Virus record (IMG/VR): IMGVR_UViG_3300027844_001828
Span: 124,001 to 188,000 of that record
Length of the DNA: 64,000 bases
Reading direction: 5' to 3' (one strand)
Shown here: piece by piece, positions 2,270 through 46,218 of the stretch
Layout of the letters: every line of letters begins with the position of its first letter
How positions within the stretch are numbered: the first letter of the stretch is position 1
Notes under the pieces: model-generated
Databases searched by the model: none
The model's input: the letters and a program-made list of their open reading frames with translations, nothing else
Told to the model about the DNA's origin: nothing
Program-made: the position numbers and the translations under genes

Positions 2270-2712
2270 GAAAAATAAAGAAAGTAACGTGGGCAGAGTG
2301 TGAGCAGTGGATAAATACGGCTACTGATTACTGGAATGACGAAATCATAGTCAATGAATTGGTAATAAATAATATCTATGGGATACCAAGAGGGGGGATA
2401 ATTTTTGCCACAATGCTTTCACACCAACTTGATATACCTCTTATTGCAAACAAAGAAGACATTGGAGAGTCCACTTTGATTGTAGATGACATTGCGGACT
2501 CCGGTAGCACATTTCATGATTTCATTATACCATTGAATAGAATTCAAGGCAGACACTTCCGTTTAACATCGGCAATAGTTGTAAATCAATCATCCACTTT
2601 TTTACCTCAACAATTTTCCTTTATGAATCATTGGAATGACTGGATTGAGTTCCCTTATGAAACATCGGCGTATGATCACGTTAGCAAGGTAACGGCGACA
2701 GCCCAGGCTTAA
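2266..2712 (+). CDS. type I phosphoribosyltransferase (purine salvage-like)
   Basis: GIPRGG and PRPP-binding LIVDDIADSGST; C-terminal WIEFPYE. Confidence 0.85.
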   Translation: MRKIKKVTWAECEQWINTATDYWNDEIIVNELVINNIYGIPRGGIIFATMLSHQLDIPLIANKEDIGESTLIVDDIADSGSTFHDFIIPLNRIQGRHFRLTSAIVVNQSSTFLPQQFSFMNHWNDWIEFPYETSAYDHVSKVTATAQA

Positions 2713-2760
2713 TTTATACGACAATTGAATCAAACTGTCAGATAAACAACGAGAAAGAAC

Positions 2761-3369
2761 ATGGCCGATCTTAATAAAGTAAAACAACTCCGTCAAGAAA
2801 CTGGAGTTGGGATTGTTGCCTGCAAAGAGGCATTAGAAAAAGCTCACGACGATCTTAATGAAGCGAAGATTGTTCTTCGTAAGGGTAGTGGTGAGGTCGC
2901 TGAAAACTTATCTAACAGGAATGCAACTGAGGGTATTATTGTCACATACACTCACCACAACTCAAAGGTGGGATCAATTGTTGAAATTCACTGTGAAACG
3001 GATTTTGGCGCGGCTACGCTCAAAGACTTTGGTCATGAGGTCGCCATGCAAGTCGCCGCCTCAAACCCTGAGTTTATAAGTTTCGAAGATGTTTCAGAGG
3101 AAAGGATTGCTCAAGAAAGAGCGTATTTCATTTCTCAGTCCATAAATAGCATTTGTCCGCCAGAGCTTGAGTACGATGGTGAAAGTGACGAGATTGTTAA
3201 TAAAATGGTTGTCGGTAAGTTTAAAAAGTTCAGATTAGAACACTGTCTTCTTAATCAAAGAACAATCAAGGACTCCGGTGTTTCCGTAAGAGATCTTCTC
3301 AATGACCAAGTGCAACGGCTTGGGGAAAAGATCGAAATCGCTAAGTTTGCGAGGTTTCAGATCTCATAA
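2761..3369 (+). CDS. tsf: translation elongation factor Ts (short form)
   Basis: VKQLRQETGVGIVACKEAL, NATEG, VEIHCETDF, AMQVAA.NP, LGEKIEIAKFARFQI. Confidence 0.93.
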   Translation: MADLNKVKQLRQETGVGIVACKEALEKAHDDLNEAKIVLRKGSGEVAENLSNRNATEGIIVTYTHHNSKVGSIVEIHCETDFGAATLKDFGHEVAMQVAASNPEFISFEDVSEERIAQERAYFISQSINSICPPELEYDGESDEIVNKMVVGKFKKFRLEHCLLNQRTIKDSGVSVRDLLNDQVQRLGEKIEIAKFARFQIS

Positions 3370-7481: not shown

Positions 7482-8369
7482 ATGTTAGAAATGGCAGTTA
7501 GTTTACAGAGATCTGGAGATCTTGGAGATATAGGGAGCAAGGGGGAAACTGATTTGAAAAAAATTGGTGATGTTCTTGTTATGAAGAAGTCTCCTGCGAT
7601 TTGGTCTGAAATGGAAAGGAAATTCTTTTTAATAACTGTATTGAATGATCCGGTTTTAGAAATGGAAATGGGGTCGAGGGAAGTTTGGTCATTGCCATTT
7701 ATTAGACAAACACATACCATAATTGATGGTGAGGAAGATTTTAAGATAGAAGCAATATCCTCTTTTAGAGTGGATATCAATCTATTTACTGGGACGACAG
7801 GTCTGGACCCGTCAATTGCTGTTGCGGAACCAACCACTCCAAGTACAGGCCCAGAGTTATTATTGACAGATCTTGTGGAGGATGATATTGATCCAAATGA
7901 TAACGCGACAATACTCTTAGACTGCACTGGTAAAAAGTCTGAATTAAGCTGCCAGCTGTTACCTTCTTTGGATGTGGTTTCCAGAGCGGTTTTTAAGAAG
8001 GGGAATAAGGTTTGGAATCATGGTCATGAAATCCCCTCTGATTATGGAGTCATTTATGATGATATTAGCTTGGATGAGTTTGGTCCTGGAATATTAGATT
8101 TTCCAGGTGCATTAGAGATTGTTCAAGCAGGCCTTGGGTGGGCAAAGGGGAAGAATGTAAAACATGTTATTTTGGGAATCGTACAAGATATTCCTGGAGT
8201 TATGACAAGTATGTTAAAGTATGGTTTGAGGCCACACAGGCCATTATTGGGAAAGACGACACAAGAGGTCCTTGATTTGGTTGATGCGAACTCAATAGAG
8301 TATGACGATATCCAAATTGACGTAGGCGGAACTATCATAAATCACAGTCTGGTCAGGAGAAACATATAA
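7482..8369 (+). CDS. hypothetical protein; N-terminal ~140 aa paralogous to 9644..10072
   Basis: Shared KKxGD, PAxW, FFLITxLxDPVLExE, GLDPS motifs; extra ~150-aa C-terminal domain. Confidence 0.75.
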   Translation: MLEMAVSLQRSGDLGDIGSKGETDLKKIGDVLVMKKSPAIWSEMERKFFLITVLNDPVLEMEMGSREVWSLPFIRQTHTIIDGEEDFKIEAISSFRVDINLFTGTTGLDPSIAVAEPTTPSTGPELLLTDLVEDDIDPNDNATILLDCTGKKSELSCQLLPSLDVVSRAVFKKGNKVWNHGHEIPSDYGVIYDDISLDEFGPGILDFPGALEIVQAGLGWAKGKNVKHVILGIVQDIPGVMTSMLKYGLRPHRPLLGKTTQEVLDLVDANSIEYDDIQIDVGGTIINHSLVRRNI

Positions 8370-39575: not shown

Positions 39576-40613
39576 GTGAAAAGAATGATAAAATTCACAG
39601 GCATTGGCGCGTTTAGAAACGTCATTAAAGCTGTTTGCCATCGTTCCGCCTATATTGGTATGGACGATCAAGGCGAGCCTATTTATGACGGGACCAGACC
39701 AAAGCCAACGATCACATTCAATGGTGCTGTTAAGCTTCATGGAACTAACGCTGGTGTTTCTTATGAGCATGCGACCGGAGAATTTTGGGCGCAATCAAGG
39801 AAAAATACCATCACTCCAGAGAAAGACAATGCGGGCTTTTCCTTCTTTGTCGAATCTCACAAGGATGTCTTTCTTGAAATGTTCAAGAGCCTCCCATGTG
39901 ACGGAATAACAACCATTTATGGAGAGTGGTGCGGCAAGGGTGTTCAAAGCACGGTTGCCATTACTGAACTTGATAAATTCTTCGTGATCATTGGTGTTAA
40001 AGAGAGTCCTCTTGAGCCAAGCGAAGATGAAGTTGCGATCTGGCTCCCTGATGATAAAACACAGCCGTTGTCTTCAAATGATGATAGGGTCTTCAACATT
40101 CTTGACTTTCCTACGTTCTCAATTGATATAGATTTCAAGAACCCTGAACTCTCAACGAACAGGATGGTTGAAATCACAGCAGCTGTCGAGGCAGAGTGTC
40201 CAGTTGCTAAGCAGCTTGGTGTTTCTGGAATTGGAGAAGGTGTTGTTTGGAAGTCTGACGTTAATGGAGAGAGATATATCTTCAAGGTTAAAGGCGACGA
40301 ACACGCTGGCAAGTCCAAGGTCAAGACGCTTAAGCCTGTTGACAATGAAAGGCTTCAAAGGATTAACGACATTGCTGAGCAAGTAACTCCAGTGTGGAGA
40401 CTCGAACAGGCTATTCAAGAGACCTTTGACACCAATAATGGTGGCGATATCGACAGAAAAGGTCTTGGAGATTTCCTCAGATGGGTTGTCAAAGACGTGC
40501 TCAAAGAAGAGATCGATGTTATTAGCGATGCTGGTTTCGAACCAAAAGACGTTAATAAGAAGATTTCTGAAGTTTGTAGAACTTGGTTCTTCGAAAGGGA
40601 AAGCCAGGTTTAA
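39576..40613 (+). CDS. RNA ligase, Rnl2 family
   Basis: Motif I VKLHGTN, IYGEWCG, IGEGVVW, FKVKG; GTG start. Confidence 0.88.
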   Translation: MKRMIKFTGIGAFRNVIKAVCHRSAYIGMDDQGEPIYDGTRPKPTITFNGAVKLHGTNAGVSYEHATGEFWAQSRKNTITPEKDNAGFSFFVESHKDVFLEMFKSLPCDGITTIYGEWCGKGVQSTVAITELDKFFVIIGVKESPLEPSEDEVAIWLPDDKTQPLSSNDDRVFNILDFPTFSIDIDFKNPELSTNRMVEITAAVEAECPVAKQLGVSGIGEGVVWKSDVNGERYIFKVKGDEHAGKSKVKTLKPVDNERLQRINDIAEQVTPVWRLEQAIQETFDTNNGGDIDRKGLGDFLRWVVKDVLKEEIDVISDAGFEPKDVNKKISEVCRTWFFERESQV

Positions 40614-42698: not shown

Positions 42699-43054
42699 AA
42701 AATCTTGATAAAATATTCTCGGAGGAAGATATCACTCTTCTCATTGAATATGCAGATGGGAGAAAGCATGATAATTTTGAATACGAAATAGAGACTTTTG
42801 ATCATGAAAATATAGGTAGGACTATGCTTCACATGAAAAACGGTCTTTGTGAACAGAGGCTTATCGCTCGTTTTCACTATCCTAAAAACGAGGGTTCTGA
42901 TGATGGTTATGGGTATCCAGAAATGATGTTGGTAATAGGTAATGATGGCGATGTTTCCTTTCAAAATTTGGGGAACTGTCGTTTCCGTCTCCACGAACCT
43001 CTCAAGGCTTATGAATTGATGTTGAGACGATTAAGACCAGAACTTTTTGAATAG
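42695..43054 (+). CDS. hypothetical protein
   Basis: ATGA overlap; ends just before the ncRNA promoter. Confidence 0.65.
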   Translation: MKNLDKIFSEEDITLLIEYADGRKHDNFEYEIETFDHENIGRTMLHMKNGLCEQRLIARFHYPKNEGSDDGYGYPEMMLVIGNDGDVSFQNLGNCRFRLHEPLKAYELMLRRLRPELFE

Positions 43055-43057
43055 GAC

Positions 43058-43086
43058 TTGACACAGGGTAAAGACTGTGTTATGTT
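43058..43086 (+). promoter_or_regulatory. promoter of ROOL-like RNA (TTGACA-N17-TATGTT, extended TG)
   Basis: Consensus -35; no downstream ORF, so it drives an RNA. Confidence 0.75.
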
Positions 43087-43091
43087 GTATC

Positions 43092-43722
43092 ATGTTAGAG
43101 ACAATTGAATATCGAAAGTTTGATGGCGTGGAGACAGGATTATGGGTAACCGTAGAATTGATGTTAACGTAGCGCCAGCAGTGGAGTGGAGACGTACCAC
43201 TATGGAGTGGAATTCATAGAAGCTGTGAGGGACACATAATAAGACTTTTAAAGAGGCTTGAGGATTAGGGCGTAACCCACTCAAGTAACTATGTAGCCCT
43301 CTCGTTTTGCCGGTCAGAAGCGATAGTGTAGACCGGTGAAAGCTGGCATTTATGCCTAAATAAATAGGGAGACCGTCTACCCGAATAAAGTCGGCACTCA
43401 GTTCCCCAGAGTTAATGGGGACGGGATTTTGGAAGCCTCCCCAGATTGGCTCTACGTTTTGCATTGTTCGGAAATTCAATGTCGTAGCTGCGCACTACGT
43501 TAGGTGGCTCCAATGCGCAATTTTTATTTTGATGCTGTGAACGTAATTAATGCGAACAAGGGAGTTGGTGTCAGGGAGCGAGGGTAACGGAATGAGTACC
43601 GGTGAACCTAGCGGATGGGGATACTTGATCAGCATCTTTGATTAACCGGATGGCGCTATCCTTAAAGTGTCGGAAAACACTATCCTTAAGTGTGGGCAGA
43701 ATATTCTTTAGGCCCTAAACTA
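43092..43722 (+). ncRNA. large structured ncRNA, ROOL-like (~630 nt)
   Basis: No coding frame; many hairpins (TTGAG..GGG-CGTAA-CCC..CTCAA, CCGGTC..GACCGG, CCCCA..TGGGG, CGTAG..CTACG, GTGT-CGGAAA-ACAC); 5' ACAATTGAATA...ATGGCGTGGAGACAGGATTATG and 3' AAAGTGTCGGAAA resemble ROOL segments as I recall them; identity needs a covariance-model search. Confidence 0.65.
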
Positions 43723-43954
43723 AAAGATTATCGACATCGGATACAGATGGGGCCTGGGGCGGCATTGAGGCTTCCTTGATAATACATATATCAAGTAAAT
43801 AAAATGTGTCGTCATGGCGTATCGCGTTAGGATAGTTTCCATACGCCTTAATTTTAGGATCTAAAGCGCCAGCAAATGTCCACCTCCATACGGGGGGTGG
43901 ACAGCGCTGGTGAGGAAATTTTGTGAAAGTTTTGAAATTTTTTCTCAAAGCGGC

Positions 43955-43982
43955 TTGCAAAACGGAAAAGTCACGGTATAAT
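43955..43982 (+). promoter_or_regulatory. promoter of GOLLD-like RNA (TTGCAA-N16-TATAAT)
   Basis: Consensus -10; followed by ~950 nt non-coding DNA and a terminator. Confidence 0.75.
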
Positions 43983-43989
43983 AAGAAGC

Positions 43990-44930
43990 ATGTTGGAAGT
44001 GGTTAACGCCGCATCTAACAGAAAGTAAAAACTGAATATTTAATTTAAGGGCAGTATGATGTCCTCCTGTTCCCTTCGGGTAACAGGTTAAGATAAGCCA
44101 TGGAAACATGGTGAAATGGGGGACCCGCTACGGGCCTCGCCAAACTCTTCGGAGAGTGGTCAGTTATGCAAACCAAGCTTCTGTGAATTTCCCTCTTGGG
44201 GAGTTATACTTGAAGGTGGAGATTAAATGAATGTGGTGGCCAACGGTGGCTATGTTCTACTAACGTTAGCGACGAGAACTTATCTTATGCCAAACATCGA
44301 AAGTTAAGAAGCAAAGGGTAGTTGTGTTGTCTGAGTTTGCAGACAAAGGCTTCACAGCAGATTGTTGGGTAACAGGAAACCATTTAACAATGGGGGACCT
44401 GAAGTCCTGTAAATCCGTCTGGTAGCCCGCAAGGCCAAAGATATGAGGTGTGTGGCATTCTACTTCTCAAAAGGAAGCGGAACCATCGAGAGCGCACATC
44501 TTGGTAGATTTATCTGTAGCTCAATAGCAGAGCTATTCCCTCATACGGAATCGGTTTTGGTGCAACTCCAAACGGATATTTTTTAACGAAAATAAAAAAA
44601 CGCAAAGACGCTCTCGGTAGTAGGTGAAAATGGCCTAATTCCAAATCCTTCGGGTAATTTGGAGACGTGAAGCTCGCAAGGCAGATCGTTTTAGGACAAG
44701 TTAAAATTTAGTGGATTAGCGTTCACGAACTGTTCATAAGGCAGGAATGGAAACGAGTTCTGATTAGCTTACTATGACGGCGCAGTCGCAGGCGCTTAAT
44801 AAAATTGCGGTCATGATCGATGTCTGGTGTCCAGCTTGCTGGCCCAGAAGGAAATTAGGGCAAGGCACGTCGCAAGCGTACTGTAATCCTGAAGAGTCGA
44901 TTATTGAAGGTGTATTTCTCAACCTTTTAA
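43990..44930 (+). ncRNA. large structured ncRNA, GOLLD-like (~940 nt)
   Basis: Bracketed by promoter and terminator; UUCG and GNRA hairpins (CCTGTT-CCC-TTCG-GGT-AACAGG, CCATG-GAAA-CATGG, CTC-TTCG-GAG, GCCC-GCAA-GGC, ATCC-TTCG-GGT); motifs GGGTAGTTGTGTTG, GTGTGTGGCATT..CTCAAAAGG, CGCAAAGAC, TTAGTGGAT, CGCAAG as recalled for GOLLD. Confidence 0.75.
44510..44580 (+). tRNA. tRNA-Met(CAT)-like element embedded in the GOLLD-like RNA
   Basis: Acceptor TTATCTG/CGGATAT (1-72 mismatch), D arm GCTC-AATAGCA-GAGC, anticodon arm ATTCC-CTCATAC-GGAAT, T arm TTTGG-TGCAACT-CCAAA; no encoded CCA; atypical T loop. Confidence 0.7.
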
Positions 44931-44935
44931 TTTTT

Positions 44936-44970
44936 TGTCAGGTGACTTCGGTCGTCTGGCATTTTTTTTT
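44936..44970 (+). terminator. intrinsic terminator of GOLLD-like RNA
   Basis: TGTCAGGTGAC-TTCG-GTCGTCTGGCA followed by T9. Confidence 0.88.
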
Positions 44971-45079
44971 GCCTATATAACATAAGGAATATGAATAATG
45001 GAGGATACAGTAAAATAATTTTTCGATGAGTTTATTAAAAAGTTCGATCTAAAAGAGTTGATCATTGATACGTTCTATC

Positions 45080-45745
45080 TTAATCGTTCCAATAATCTTT
45101 CTCGTCATCGTCGTTATCCTCAAAGGCGTGAGGGCTTACTTCCCCATCCCATTCATAATCGATATTGAAATCTTCTTGAAGCATTTCAAAGTTGTTCAAA
45201 TCATTATCTATAAGTGAATGTCCTTGACCGTGTCCAAAGACAACCTCTTGGACTCTACCTTTTGGCATTTCAACGCCAAAATATTCAATGCCATTTGGAA
45301 TTACTCCATAAACTGGTTGGTCATTTGTTAAGTGTGAGGGAGTTATATCTATAACCTTTCCATTTAATGAATTCCACCCGTGATTCCTGAAAAATGTTCC
45401 GGCATATCCTTCAACATATTTGAAGTCATTGTCATGTAACATTAATAATTGAGAAGAGTAGAAACACTCTTTGACTTCCCCGCGTTTAAAAATACTATAA
45501 AGGCTTTCAATTTTTTCCTGTTCTTCAGGGGTCAATTCAGCAGACTCATACAGTTTGCCATGGGTCAAATAGAAATATGGCATCGTAGGATAATGAAAAT
45601 CGCTTGTTTGAGAATTCATTCCTACTTGCATAATGTGTTGCATAGCCAGAGCAGTCATAATCTGGCTGTGTGAAAACTGATTTTTCCAGGCCAATAATTC
45701 AGGCGTTATGTTCTCGATCCAATTTGATTTTTTGTACCAATTCAT
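45080..45745 (-). CDS. hypothetical protein with MNWYKKS N-terminus
   Basis: GGAG RBS before ATG 45745; GYA...HGWNS..G..ID segment. Confidence 0.7.
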   Translation of the reverse strand: MNWYKKSNWIENITPELLAWKNQFSHSQIMTALAMQHIMQVGMNSQTSDFHYPTMPYFYLTHGKLYESAELTPEEQEKIESLYSIFKRGEVKECFYSSQLLMLHDNDFKYVEGYAGTFFRNHGWNSLNGKVIDITPSHLTNDQPVYGVIPNGIEYFGVEMPKGRVQEVVFGHGQGHSLIDNDLNNFEMLQEDFNIDYEWDGEVSPHAFEDNDDDEKDYWND

Positions 45746-45858
45746 AGGGTCTCCAATTCCACTTATTATTCTTAACATACACAGAAAAACCCTTCCGGCA
45801 AAGCTTACTATATGGTCATGTGGCAGTATAGTATTACATGTAACAGGAGTAATGTCTT

Positions 45859-46218
45859 ATGGGAATTGAATATAAGAGGTATTTACTCTTTGACCATCGT
45901 GCTGTAAAGTACTTAAACGAAATACTTTCTAAAACAGAGGCTAATATCGTAATAAGTTCGTCTTGGAGAAAAATCCATACTTTAGATGAAATTAGAGAGC
46001 AATTTAAGTCTCAGGGTATAATTGATGTCGATAGAGTCGTCAGTATGACAGGTGGGTCAAAAGACGGGATAAGAGGCGGAGAGATTCAAACCTGGATTGA
46101 CAATAACCCATGTGGTAATTTTGTAATAATAGATGATGACTCAGACATGATTCATCTCATGGACCATCTCGTTTTAACAAGAAACGCGACCGGCTTATCT
46201 TATCGAAACAAACTTTAA
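45859..46218 (+). pseudogene. HAD-domain (RNA-repair 'Swiss army knife'-like) protein lacking N-terminal DxD motif
   Basis: IVISSSWR, RGGEIQTWI, FVIIDDDSDM present; motif I absent. Confidence 0.5.

What the first reader, a model, noticed from the sequence alone, without database searches (positions are those of the whole stretch)
44510..44580. tRNA-Met(CAT)-like cloverleaf embedded inside the GOLLD-like RNA
Seen: a complete cloverleaf with CAT anticodon, 1-72 mismatch (initiator-like), T-loop TGCAACT instead of TTCRANT, anticodon stem without the three G-C pairs of initiators, and no CCA. It lies between conserved-looking GOLLD blocks (…GCGCACATCTTGG and CGCAAAGAC…). tRNAs nested in GOLLD variable regions are known in general. 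This one is degenerate, so it may be a cargo, processing signal or decoy rather than a working tRNA (Met or lysidine-modified Ile).
Basis: partly seen in the sequence, partly recalled or inferred. Interest (0 to 1): 0.65.

Follow-up and report, generated by a model that had tools for sequence, protein, structure and literature searches.

The report
tRNA-like domain built into GOLLD RNA
A marine jumbo phage makes a very abundant ~870-base GOLLD RNA that carries, in its internal linker, a tRNA-shaped domain with a methionine anticodon; it stays attached to the big RNA and differs from the phage's ordinary tRNA genes, which bears on what these cage-forming RNAs are for.

Summary
ARAGORN and Rfam (49.1 bits) call a 71-nt cloverleaf with anticodon CAT at 44510-44580 (+). 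It lies in the variable linker of a full-length GOLLD match (44445-44925, 148.1 bits against a cut-off of 150, E 1e-40). The window comes from a 235.6-kb marine phage.

The element stands apart from the phage's 10 other tRNAs. It alone lacks CCA, lacks GG in the D-loop, and has T-loop UGCAACU and a U1.U72 mismatch.

Across 142 distinct related GOLLDs, 98 have a tRNA-sized insert at this spot.
- D, anticodon and T arms covary strongly (97% paired).
- Only the inner 4 acceptor pairs are kept.
- CCA is rare: 8/78, against 385/454 free tRNAs in the same loci.
- The anticodon loop changes about 6 times faster than the body.

The odd T-loop is not decay. UGC T-loops always co-occur with AG, not GG, in the D-loop (5-6 cases, at least 2 origins). 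This gives an A18/G55 elbow that keeps G19-C56.

Four seawater metatranscriptomes hold an abundant RNA contig from about 44054 to 44900 that runs unbroken through the element.

Best reading: an integral, non-excised tRNA mimic of the GOLLD cage RNA. Embedded tRNAs are already known, so this is a new variant of a known kind.

The parts
44054..44925 (+). GOLLD RNA, about 870 nt: 5' domain 44054-44444, conserved 3' domain 44445-44925
   Evidence: RNA contigs from four seawater metatranscriptomes cover 44054/44055/44064/44091 to 44895-44901 at depth 89-850, while the flanks are at 0-2.6. In run X11 an adapter sequence abuts 44054. Rfam GOLLD matches 44445-44925. The lengths either side of the linker (449 and about 324 nt) match the solved env-38 GOLLD (PMC12286853).
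44445..44502 (+). Conserved hairpin just 5' of the linker (Rfam GOLLD model positions 1-62), ending in GCACAUCUU
   Evidence: cmscan alignment. The block is shared with Caulobacter phiCbK-like phages and was used as the search pattern.
44503..44601 (+). Variable linker of GOLLD (J13/15 in the published numbering), about 98 nt, holding the tRNA-like domain
   Evidence: Boundaries come from the conserved flanks in 138 homologues. The literature places this linker in the cage interior (PMC12286853; PMC12990946).
44510..44580 (+). tRNA-like domain, 71 nt, anticodon CAT at 44542-44544
   Evidence: ARAGORN; Rfam tRNA 49.1 bits.
44511..44516 (+). Acceptor stem 5' strand. It pairs with 44573-44578 (6 pairs). 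Position 1 (U, 44510) faces U72 (44579) as a U.U mismatch; the discriminator is U at 44580.
   Evidence: ARAGORN drawing. In context its predicted pairing probability is only 0.04. In the family only pairs 4-69 to 7-66 are conserved.
44519..44533 (+). D-arm: stem GCUC/GAGC, loop AAUAGCA (A18 G19 in place of G18 G19)
   Evidence: Pairing probability 0.93. The arm covaries in homologues.
44535..44551 (+). Anticodon arm: stem AUUCC/GGAAU, loop CUCAUAC (U33 and A37 canonical)
   Evidence: The same stem carries 13 different loops in 15 homologues.
44556..44572 (+). T-arm: stem UUUGG/CCAAA, loop UGCAACU (G55 in place of U55)
   Evidence: The loop is identical to the T-loop consensus of Rfam's Tymo_tRNA-like family. 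It covaries with the D-loop.
44581..44601 (+). U/A-rich spacer after the discriminator, with no CCA, leading into the conserved ACGCAAAGAC block
   Evidence: Sequence. It can form a weak all-A-U hairpin that competes with the acceptor stem.
44936..44970 (+). Intrinsic-terminator-like hairpin followed by a run of T, downstream of GOLLD
43955..43982 (+). Promoter-like site (TTGCAA-16-TATAAT), 72 nt upstream of the observed RNA 5' end; its role is uncertain
   Evidence: compared with the RNA contig starts.

Best explanation
**What it is (shown).** The element is the tRNA-like domain that a large subfamily of phage GOLLD RNAs carries in the internal linker between the 5' and 3' domains. It is transcribed as part of an ~870-nt GOLLD RNA that is highly abundant in seawater. 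It is present, uncut, in that RNA.

**How it most likely works (inferred).** It is not matured into a charged tRNA.
- It folds into an L-shape held by a remodelled elbow: T-loop UGCAA with an intercalating A18, and the G19-C56 pair kept.
- It keeps a canonical 7-nt anticodon loop, CUCAUAC.
- It stays tethered to GOLLD by a short, weak acceptor stem.
- GOLLD assembles into 12-14-mer cages whose linkers face the interior (published structures). The cage would therefore hold about a dozen tethered Met-anticodon tRNA mimics.

**Likely purpose (speculative).** It may bind or titrate a factor that reads the tRNA body and anticodon loop, for example a host anticodon nuclease or another tRNA-targeting enzyme. 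The anticodon loop would be the part that sets specificity.

**Confidence.** That it is the GOLLD-linker tRNA-like domain: about 0.95. That it stays attached and acts as a mimic: about 0.55. The figure given is for the whole statement.
For: **Location and kinship**
- Same position as embedded tRNAs in Caulobacter phage Karma and phiCbK GOLLDs, which score 171 and 165 bits.
- Same position in 98 of 142 distinct GOLLDs recovered by pattern scans.

**The structure is under selection**
- In 88 distinct linkers, the D, anticodon and T stems are 97% paired.
- All 14 pairs show double changes.
- The covariation score is 0.734, against 0.195 when shuffled and at most 0.16 when slid.

**It differs from normal tRNA genes**
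- In this genome the other 10 tRNAs all have UUCRANY T-loops, GG in the D-loop and an encoded CCA.
- In the same loci, free tRNAs have CCA in 385/454 and a 7-bp acceptor stem in 380/454. Embedded ones have CCA in 8/78 and a 7-bp stem in 2/78.
- Acceptor pairs 1-72, 2-71 and 3-70 are at background level.
- The genome encodes no CCA-adding enzyme.
- It holds a canonical tRNA-Met(CAT) elsewhere.

**The elbow is remodelled, not decayed**
- AG/UGC occurs in 5 linkers, plus L223.
- GG/UUC occurs in 72.
- No mixed combinations occur (Fisher 1.5e-7).
- At least 2 and up to 4-5 origins are needed on the backbone tree.
- UGNRA T-loops with an intercalating adenosine are the standard non-tRNA T-loop type (10.1101/2022.12.26.521914). 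In tRNA, G18 intercalates and G19-C56 caps the elbow (PMC4810234).

**It is retained in the RNA**
- Contigs from 4 metatranscriptomes span 44054-44900 without a break.

**The anticodon loop is the variable part**
- In 19 independent close pairs the loop differs at 47/137 sites and the body at 51/914 (odds ratio 8.8, p 2e-19).
- U33 is kept in 65/69 and R37 in 63/69.

**Published support**
- The linker lies inside the cage, and embedded tRNAs have been reported.
Against: - The RNA evidence is from assembled contigs. These cannot show ends, proportions or a small excised species, and standard libraries miss 70-nt RNAs. Partial release is not excluded.
- This copy has 6 acceptor pairs, better than the family norm. 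It also has U at -1 and an intact G19-C56 elbow, so RNase P or RNase Z could in principle act on it.
- One free phage tRNA (L131) with a full acceptor stem and ACCA carries the same A18/G55 elbow. That elbow therefore does not by itself rule out tRNA function.
- About 30% of related GOLLDs have short linkers without any tRNA. The domain is therefore dispensable for the RNA as such.
- No binding partner is known, and the decoy idea rests on inference only.
- The covariation statistics are not fully corrected for relatedness.
Confidence: 0.55

Rival explanations
1. It is a working phage tRNA gene (elongator Met, or Ile after lysidine modification). GOLLD serves as its precursor or store. RNase P and RNase Z release it, and the host CCA-adding enzyme completes it.
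For: - It passes Rfam's tRNA cut-off, with a canonical anticodon loop.
- It has 6 of 7 acceptor pairs.
- The G19-C56 elbow pair is kept.
- The same elbow variant occurs in a free, CCA-ended tRNA.
- A few embedded tRNAs (8/78) do end in CCA.
- Rapid anticodon change with U33/R37 retained would also fit selection on decoding.
- A review proposes 'inhibited storage' of embedded tRNA (PMC12990946).
Against: - It is the only one of 11 tRNAs in this genome without CCA, without GG and with G55.
- It has a U1.U72 mismatch.
- At family level the outer 3 acceptor pairs are lost.
- Embedded loops of 6 and 8 nt occur.
- The abundant RNA is uncut across the element.
- The phage has no CCA-adding enzyme.
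- A canonical CAT tRNA exists elsewhere in the genome.
- In Mycolicibacterium aubagnense no product of the embedded pseudo-tRNA was seen by northern blot (PMC6582537).
Confidence: 0.2
2. It is a processing signal. The tRNA shape recruits RNase P and/or RNase Z to cut GOLLD into separate 5' and 3' domain RNAs, as tRNA-like elements do in MALAT1/mascRNA and in mitochondrial transcripts. The small product is a by-product.
For: - It sits exactly at the boundary between the two structural domains.
- The tRNA body and elbow, which are the parts RNase P reads, are conserved, while the acceptor end is not.
Against: - RNA contigs in four samples bridge both junctions.
- Full-length GOLLD assembles into cages with the linker intact.
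- A third of relatives lack the element.
- A weak, short acceptor stem is a poor RNase P substrate (established knowledge, not tested here).
Confidence: 0.1
3. It is a functionless relic of a tRNA gene captured in a tolerant linker and is now drifting.
For: - The linker is the variable, disordered part of GOLLD, and many GOLLDs do without a tRNA.
- This copy deviates from the tRNA consensus.
- Its fold energy is barely better than shuffles.
Against: - Stems are kept by compensatory changes in 88 homologues.
- The D- and T-loops change together.
- U33 and R37 are retained.
- The sequence is identical in RNA contigs from four different samples and in two other viral contigs.
Confidence: 0.1

Closest known systems
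tRNAs embedded in the GOLLD variable linker (J13/15): noted for GOLLD in general, tRNA-Phe in Mycolicibacterium GOLLD, and a 'pseudo-tRNA' in M. aubagnense GOLLD
   Same: Same RNA family, same insertion point between the 5' and 3' domains, same phage and tRNA-rich context.
   Different: - It comes from a marine jumbo phage rather than a mycobacterial tRNA array.
- It has a CAT anticodon.
- It has an A18/G55 elbow.
- There is direct environmental RNA evidence that it stays in the full-length RNA.
- The class traits found here were not found described in the papers read: a 4-bp conserved acceptor stem, no CCA and fast-changing anticodon loops.
Plant-virus tRNA-like structures of the tymovirus type (Rfam RF00233)
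   Same: - The T-loop UGCAACU is identical to that family's consensus, and the region gives a weak match (23.3 bits, E 0.08).
- Both are tRNA-shaped parts of a larger viral RNA.
- The TYMV element keeps a tRNA-like D/T elbow (PMC4810234).
   Different: - The tymovirus element is 3'-terminal, ends in CCA, has a pseudoknotted acceptor arm and is aminoacylated.
- This element is internal, has an ordinary (weak) acceptor helix and has no CCA.
- It scores below the family's cut-off of 40 bits, so it is not a member.
tRNA-like domains of larger bacterial non-coding RNAs (tmRNA, YrlA Y RNA)
   Same: A tRNA-mimicking module that is kept as part of a bigger functional RNA and is used to engage tRNA-binding machinery.
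   Different: Those lack an anticodon arm. Here a full cloverleaf with a canonical anticodon loop is kept. There is no sequence relationship. This comparison rests on general knowledge and was not tested here.
mascRNA/MALAT1-type tRNA-like processing signals
   Same: A cloverleaf inside a long non-coding RNA that lacks an encoded CCA.
   Different: Those are efficiently cleaved out by RNase P and RNase Z. Here the abundant species spans the element.
Ordinary phage-encoded tRNAs
   Same: A cloverleaf that passes the tRNA models, encoded by a phage that also carries 10 other tRNAs.
   Different: No CCA, no GG in the D-loop, G55, a U1.U72 mismatch, and a position inside another RNA gene.

Membership tests
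GOLLD RNA (Rfam RF02032) | Match to the family covariance model over its whole length, at or above the curated score | tested here: inconclusive
   The full model (1-416) is aligned, E 1.3e-40, but at 148.1 bits against the cut-off of 150. Clear relatives found with the same flanks score 150-192 bits.
GOLLD RNA (Rfam RF02032) | Phage or prophage origin, size of about 800 nt or more, with a variable 5' domain, a linker and a conserved 3' domain | tested here: met
   It lies in a 235.6-kb virus record. The RNA is about 870 nt, with 449 nt before and about 324 nt after the linker. This matches the published env-38 layout.
GOLLD RNA (Rfam RF02032) | Assembly into a multimeric RNA-only cage | not testable with these tools
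   Known from cryo-EM of other members only.
GOLLD-embedded tRNA (linker J13/15 insert) | A cloverleaf placed between the hairpin ending GCACNNCUU and the A-rich/GCAAAG block | tested here: met
   It starts 8 nt after CUU. 75 of 98 long linkers in homologues give an ARAGORN tRNA at offset 5-15.
Canonical bacterial/phage tRNA (Rfam RF00005) | Cloverleaf that scores above the family cut-off | tested here: met
   49.1 bits against a cut-off of 29; ARAGORN tRNA-Met(CAT).
Canonical bacterial/phage tRNA (Rfam RF00005) | Seven-pair acceptor stem with a free 3' NCCA, either encoded as in the phage's other tRNAs or added after 3' processing | tested here: not met
   It has 6 pairs plus a U1.U72 mismatch, a discriminator U and then UUUUU. 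All 10 other tRNAs of this genome encode CCA. Post-transcriptional CCA addition could not be tested.
Canonical bacterial/phage tRNA (Rfam RF00005) | G18 G19 in the D-loop and U54 U55 C56 in the T-loop | tested here: not met
   It has A18 G19 and U54 G55 C56. Among free tRNAs of related loci, 430 of 454 have GG with UUC.
Canonical bacterial/phage tRNA (Rfam RF00005) | Released from its precursor as a separate ~75-nt RNA | tested here: inconclusive
   The full-length RNA spanning the element is abundant. Contigs cannot show whether a small species also exists.
Bacterial initiator tRNA-fMet | C1xA72 mismatch, three consecutive G-C pairs (29-41, 30-40, 31-39) in the anticodon stem, and A11-U24 in the D-stem | tested here: not met
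   It has U1.U72, an anticodon stem AUUCC/GGAAU with only two G-C pairs, and C11-G24. The 1-72 mismatch is common to embedded tRNAs of every anticodon.
Tymovirus-type tRNA-like structure (Rfam RF00233) | Match above the cut-off; 3'-terminal position with CCA; pseudoknotted acceptor arm | tested here: not met
   23.3 bits against a cut-off of 40. The element is internal and has no CCA. Only the T-arm is shared.

The most novel reading that the evidence does not exclude
GOLLD cages are displays of tethered tRNA mimics. The embedded domain is a scaffold with a fixed body and elbow, and its anticodon loop is swapped rapidly. Lys anticodons are strongly over-represented, and this window carries the Met CAU loop. 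In this reading the mimics bait or soak up host enzymes that attack particular tRNAs, such as anticodon nucleases. GOLLD would then be a phage counter-defence RNA. The remodelled A18/G55 elbow would keep the mimic out of normal tRNA processing and modification.
Probability: 0.15. Interest if true: 0.85.

Novelty: new variant of a known kind. Interest (0 to 1): 0.58.

Why it matters
GOLLD is one of the largest bacterial/phage non-coding RNAs. It was recently shown to form hollow RNA-only cages, and its function is unknown. The linker that faces the cage interior is the obvious place for a payload.

- **This case.** In the sea, the tRNA-shaped payload is part of a highly abundant full-length RNA.
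- **The family.** The payload is a distinct class. It has a conserved tRNA body and elbow, a stunted acceptor end, rarely CCA, and an anticodon loop that changes far faster than the rest.
- **What follows.** A vague note ('tRNAs are sometimes present in the linker') becomes a testable idea: the cage presents anticodon arms rather than storing ordinary tRNAs.
- **Structural interest.** The paired A18/G55 change is a natural swap between the two known T-loop types inside a tRNA fold.

Tried and rejected
- **blastn against phages.** Searching 43000-45200 found only a 56-69-nt block in Caulobacter phiCbK-like phages. It served as a lead, but sequence similarity alone does not find the family, so pattern scans were needed.
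- **Thermodynamic folding.** Folding the element alone and inside the 870-nt RNA was ambiguous. The D and T arms are predicted, the acceptor stem is not, and z is -1.8. It neither proves nor refutes the cloverleaf. No pairing with the GOLLD core was seen.
- **Initiator-tRNA reading.** Rejected; see the membership test.
- **Partner for the anticodon loop.** I looked for a second site in GOLLD that changes in step with the loop. Karma and phiCbK differ at 22 sites in 1300 nt: 5 in the loop, and a second cluster about 490 nt upstream that is not complementary to either loop. No partner was found.
- **Complement or duplicate of free tRNAs.** I asked whether embedded anticodons complement or duplicate the free tRNAs of the same locus. 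Six of 28 are duplicates, about what chance gives, so this is uninformative.
- **tRNA completion and repair genes in the genome.** No CCA-adding enzyme and no RtcB were found. An RNA ligase and a HAD 'Swiss Army Knife' RNA-repair domain lie nearby. This is suggestive context only.
- **ORFs under and beside the RNA.** The ORFs 43090-43479 (-), 43715-43960 (-) and 45080-45778 (-) have no Pfam or PHROG family.
- **Paper not held.** The Morgado 2020 paper on mycobacterial GOLLD is not in the library. It is cited only through the review that quotes it.
Full report
**1. The observation**

ARAGORN reports a single tRNA in the window: tRNA-Met(CAT), 44510-44580 on the + strand. Rfam's tRNA model matches the same 71 bases end to end at 49.1 bits (cut-off 29, E 1.8e-7).

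- position 1 (U) faces U72;
- pairs 2-71 to 7-66 form, one of them G.U;
- the D-arm is GCUC/AAUAGCA/GAGC;
- the anticodon arm is AUUCC/CUCAUAC/GGAAU;
- the T-arm is UUUGG/UGCAACU/CCAAA;
- the discriminator U is followed by UUUUU, not CCA.

At the curated threshold Rfam reports no GOLLD. With E-value reporting, RF02032 aligns over its whole length (1-416) to 44445-44925 at 148.1 bits, two bits under the cut-off of 150, with E 1.3e-40.

**2. Where the window comes from, and expression**

The window is bases 124001-188000 of a 235.6-kb virus record, estimated 93% complete. The same contig was found in a metagenome collection (L181).

Public runs that hold the stretch are marine or seawater samples, and nine are metatranscriptomes. 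Laying four of them on 42800-45800 gave one RNA contig per run:
- X11: 44054-44896;
- X13: 44064-44895;
- X14: 44055-44901;
- X16: 44091-44898.

Their word depths are 89-850, while neighbouring DNA is at 0-2.6. There are no differences and no joints. In X11 an adapter sequence abuts 44054.

So an ~850-870-nt RNA is far more abundant than the neighbouring phage transcripts, and it runs through the cloverleaf. The lengths before and after the linker (449 and about 324 nt) fit the solved env-38 GOLLD, whose linker is nt 497-538 of 833.

Caveats:
- These are contigs, so they cannot show exact ends, proportions or a small excised RNA.
- The contigs stop about 25 nt before the end of the Rfam model. 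This may only reflect poor 3'-end coverage.
- A promoter-like site (43955-43982) lies 72 nt upstream of the observed 5' end.
- A terminator-like hairpin follows at 44936-44961.

**3. Comparison with the phage's own tRNAs**

The whole genome has 11 tRNAs. The other ten, including a second tRNA-Met(CAT) at genome position 218173-218248, all have UUCRANY T-loops, GG in the D-loop and an encoded CCA. The GOLLD-embedded one is the single exception on all three counts. No CCA-adding enzyme gene was found in the genome.

**4. Relatives**

blastn found only a short block shared with Caulobacter phiCbK-like jumbo phages. There Rfam finds GOLLD at 171 bits (Karma) and 165 bits (phiCbK), with a tRNA at the same place in the linker. 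GenBank annotates these as ordinary tRNA-Lys and tRNA-Gly and does not annotate GOLLD.

Pattern scans built from the conserved hairpin recovered 229 loci from viral, metagenome and genome collections, of which 142 are distinct.

Linker length is bimodal. Forty linkers are 30-69 nt without a tRNA, and 98 are 70-119 nt. Of the 98 long linkers, 75 give an ARAGORN tRNA starting 5-15 nt after CUU, and most of the rest show recognisable D- and T-arms. Rfam confirmed GOLLD in every relative I spot-checked.

**5. Is the cloverleaf maintained?**

I used a MAFFT alignment of the 88 distinct long linkers (A1) and projected the window's D, anticodon and T stems onto it.
- 97% of cells are paired.
- All 14 pairs have changes on both sides.
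- The covariation score is 0.734, against 0.195 for shuffles (0 of 500 reached it) and at most 0.16 for slid registers.

The acceptor stem is different.
- Pairs 4-69 to 7-66 form in 83-94% of sequences, against 41-66% when strands are shuffled between sequences.
- Pairs 1-72, 2-71 and 3-70 form in 50, 33 and 57%, which is background.

As a control I took free-standing tRNAs in the same loci.

| | Free tRNAs | Embedded tRNAs |
|---|---|---|
| Seven acceptor pairs | 380/454 | 2/78 |
| CCA | 385/454 | 8/78 |

The embedded elements are thus a class of their own: a tRNA body with a stunted acceptor end. The window's copy has 6 pairs, so it is at the better end of this class. Its U1.U72 mismatch is a class trait, not an initiator mark. 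It also lacks the initiator's G-C run and has C11-G24.

**6. The odd T-loop is half of a paired change**

In alignment A1 the two D-loop positions that are normally G18 G19, and the first three T-loop positions, combine as follows:
- GG with UUC in 72 sequences;
- AG with UGC in 5 sequences (window, L041, L130, L150, L200);
- L223 has the UGC T-loop and no GG in its D-loop, but its D-loop is poorly aligned, so it counts as a probable sixth case;
- no mixed combinations (Fisher 1.5e-7, not corrected for relatedness).

On a tree of the GOLLD backbone with the linker removed, the UGC type needs 4-5 changes, and at least 2 are forced by well-supported branches. L130, for example, is sister to the UUC-type L050 at 99%. 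The window sits on a long branch, so its own placement is unsure.

Published work gives the structural logic.
- In tRNA, residue 18 intercalates between T-loop positions 4 and 5, and G19 pairs with C56 (PMC4810234).
- T-loops outside tRNA are mostly UGNRA and use an adenosine as the intercalator (10.1101/2022.12.26.521914).

G18/U55 to A18/G55 is therefore a switch from the tRNA-type to the general T-loop type, with G19-C56 kept. The same loop, UGCAACU, is the consensus T-loop of Rfam's tymovirus tRNA-like family.

One free tRNA in a related locus has the same AG/UGCAA elbow together with a full acceptor stem and ACCA. It lies in L131, about 600 nt downstream of that locus's GOLLD linker, and looks like an initiator tRNA-Met. 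The elbow variant therefore does not by itself exclude tRNA function. It is simply much commoner among embedded elements (6 of 88) than among free ones (1 of 454).

**7. The anticodon loop is the fast-changing part**

Embedded anticodons are diverse. Lys (CUU/UUU) makes up 23 of 78, against 20 of 454 free tRNAs (odds ratio 9; not corrected for relatedness). Met CAU occurs twice (the window and L082). Several loops have 6 or 8 nt.

In 19 independent pairs of closely related elements, the loop differs at 47 of 137 sites and the D-to-T body at 51 of 914 (odds ratio 8.8, p 2e-19). Karma and phiCbK differ at 5 of 7 loop positions and at none of 67 body positions.

U33 is kept in 65 of 69 seven-base loops and a purine at 37 in 63 of 69. 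The loop's architecture is therefore constrained while the triplet turns over.

The window's anticodon stem AUUCC/GGAAU is shared by 15 elements that carry 13 different loops. The window's CAU loop is thus one variant on a common scaffold.

**8. Folding in context**

Folding the whole 872-nt RNA keeps the region locally paired. Pairing probabilities are D arm 0.93, T arm 0.66 and anticodon arm 0.42. The A-U-rich acceptor stem is not favoured (0.04), because short local hairpins compete with it. On its own, the element's centroid structure is the cloverleaf, with z -1.8. Nothing pairs it with the GOLLD core.

**9. Surroundings**

The flanking small ORFs have no family. Within a few kb lie an RNA ligase (39576-40613, PF09414) and a HAD domain typical of 'Swiss Army Knife' RNA-repair proteins (45859-46218, PF18143, E 3e-21). 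Further off are an NAD-dependent DNA ligase, NAD synthase, Clp and FtsH-like proteases. The RNA-repair genes hint at tRNA damage and repair conflicts, but they are context, not evidence.

**10. Interpretation**

Shown:
- The element is the GOLLD-linker tRNA-like domain.
- It is homologous in position and body to those of many phage GOLLDs.
- It is structurally maintained.
- It is atypical for a tRNA gene.
- It is present in the abundant full-length RNA.

Taken from the literature: the linker faces the interior of a 12-14-mer cage.

Inferred: it stays tethered and acts as a tRNA mimic whose anticodon loop sets what it engages. A decoy for tRNA-targeting host enzymes is the most attractive purpose, but it is untested.

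Rivals are a releasable tRNA, a processing signal and a relic. They are weighed in their own sections. The first cannot be excluded with contig-level RNA data.

**11. Novelty**

tRNAs in the GOLLD linker are already on record, so the kind is known. What is new here:
- the A18/G55 elbow variant and its covariation;
- the environmental RNA evidence that the element is retained;
- the class-level traits, namely the short acceptor stem, the rarity of CCA and the hypervariable anticodon loop.

I did not find these described in the papers I could read.

Noticed in passing
L040:4754-4863 (+) (= L132), L217:12951-13057 (-), L219:351-457 (+) (= L227): In these GOLLD linkers the insert is a circularly permuted tRNA. 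The order is T-arm, 3' acceptor strand, (A)CCA, a short loop, 5' acceptor strand, D-arm, anticodon arm. The 7-bp G-C acceptor stem is capped, and the module joins GOLLD through the variable-arm position. After rotating the L040 linker at the CCA, ARAGORN calls tRNA-Ser(TGA); the native order gives nothing.
   Followed up: partly
Alignment A1 (88 GOLLD linkers), e.g. L002:2613-2703 vs L003:2600-2690: The anticodon loop of embedded tRNAs changes about 6 times faster than the D-to-T body (47/137 against 51/914 sites in 19 independent close pairs). U33 and R37 are nevertheless kept. Phages Karma and phiCbK differ at 5 of 7 loop bases and at none of 67 body bases.
   Followed up: partly
Embedded versus free tRNAs in loci L002-L238: Lys anticodons (CTT, TTT) make up 23 of 78 embedded tRNAs but only 20 of 454 free tRNAs in the same loci (odds ratio 9, not corrected for relatedness).
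   Followed up: partly
L131, oriented coordinates 8029-8104 (about 600 nt downstream of that locus's GOLLD linker): A free-standing tRNA-Met(CAT) that closely resembles a bacterial initiator: acceptor GCGGGG, A11-U24, loop CUCAUAA, ACCA end. It differs in having a U1xU72 mismatch and the same A18 G19 / UGCAA elbow as the window's element.
   Followed up: partly
window 43055-44053: About 1 kb upstream of the GOLLD RNA has no ORF with any Pfam or PHROG family and no Rfam match. It has its own promoter-like site (TTGACA at 43058). Only trace RNA contigs (depth about 2) cover 43493-43720.
   Followed up: partly
window 39576-40613 (+) and 45859-46218 (+): An RNA ligase (PF09414, E 4e-11) and a HAD domain of 'Swiss Army Knife' RNA-repair proteins (PF18143, E 3e-21) flank the GOLLD locus within 4 kb. 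Neither RtcB nor a CCA-adding enzyme is found in the genome.
   Followed up: partly
window 44445-44925; also L223:467-1043: Rfam's curated cut-off for GOLLD (150 bits) misses full-length members with E 1e-36 to 1e-40 (148.1 bits here, 137.5 in L223). Default annotation therefore overlooks them.
   Followed up: yes
L002 (Caulobacter phage Karma, JX100811) 2555-3041 and L003 (phiCbK, JX163858) 2542-3028: The GenBank records annotate the embedded elements as ordinary tRNA-Lys and tRNA-Gly and do not annotate GOLLD. The phiCbK loop has G at position 33. A permuted tmRNA and two tRNA-Met genes lie just upstream on the other strand.
   Followed up: yes
L210:4758-4848, L213:3239-3325, L218:6453-6541: A third elbow type: D-loop AUUGUA (no GG) together with a 6-nt T-loop GUCAAA or similar.
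   Followed up: no
window 44896-44925: RNA contigs from four samples all stop at 44895-44901, about 25 nt before the last conserved GOLLD hairpin and 40 nt before the terminator. This is either 3' trimming or the usual loss of coverage at RNA 3' ends.
   Followed up: no
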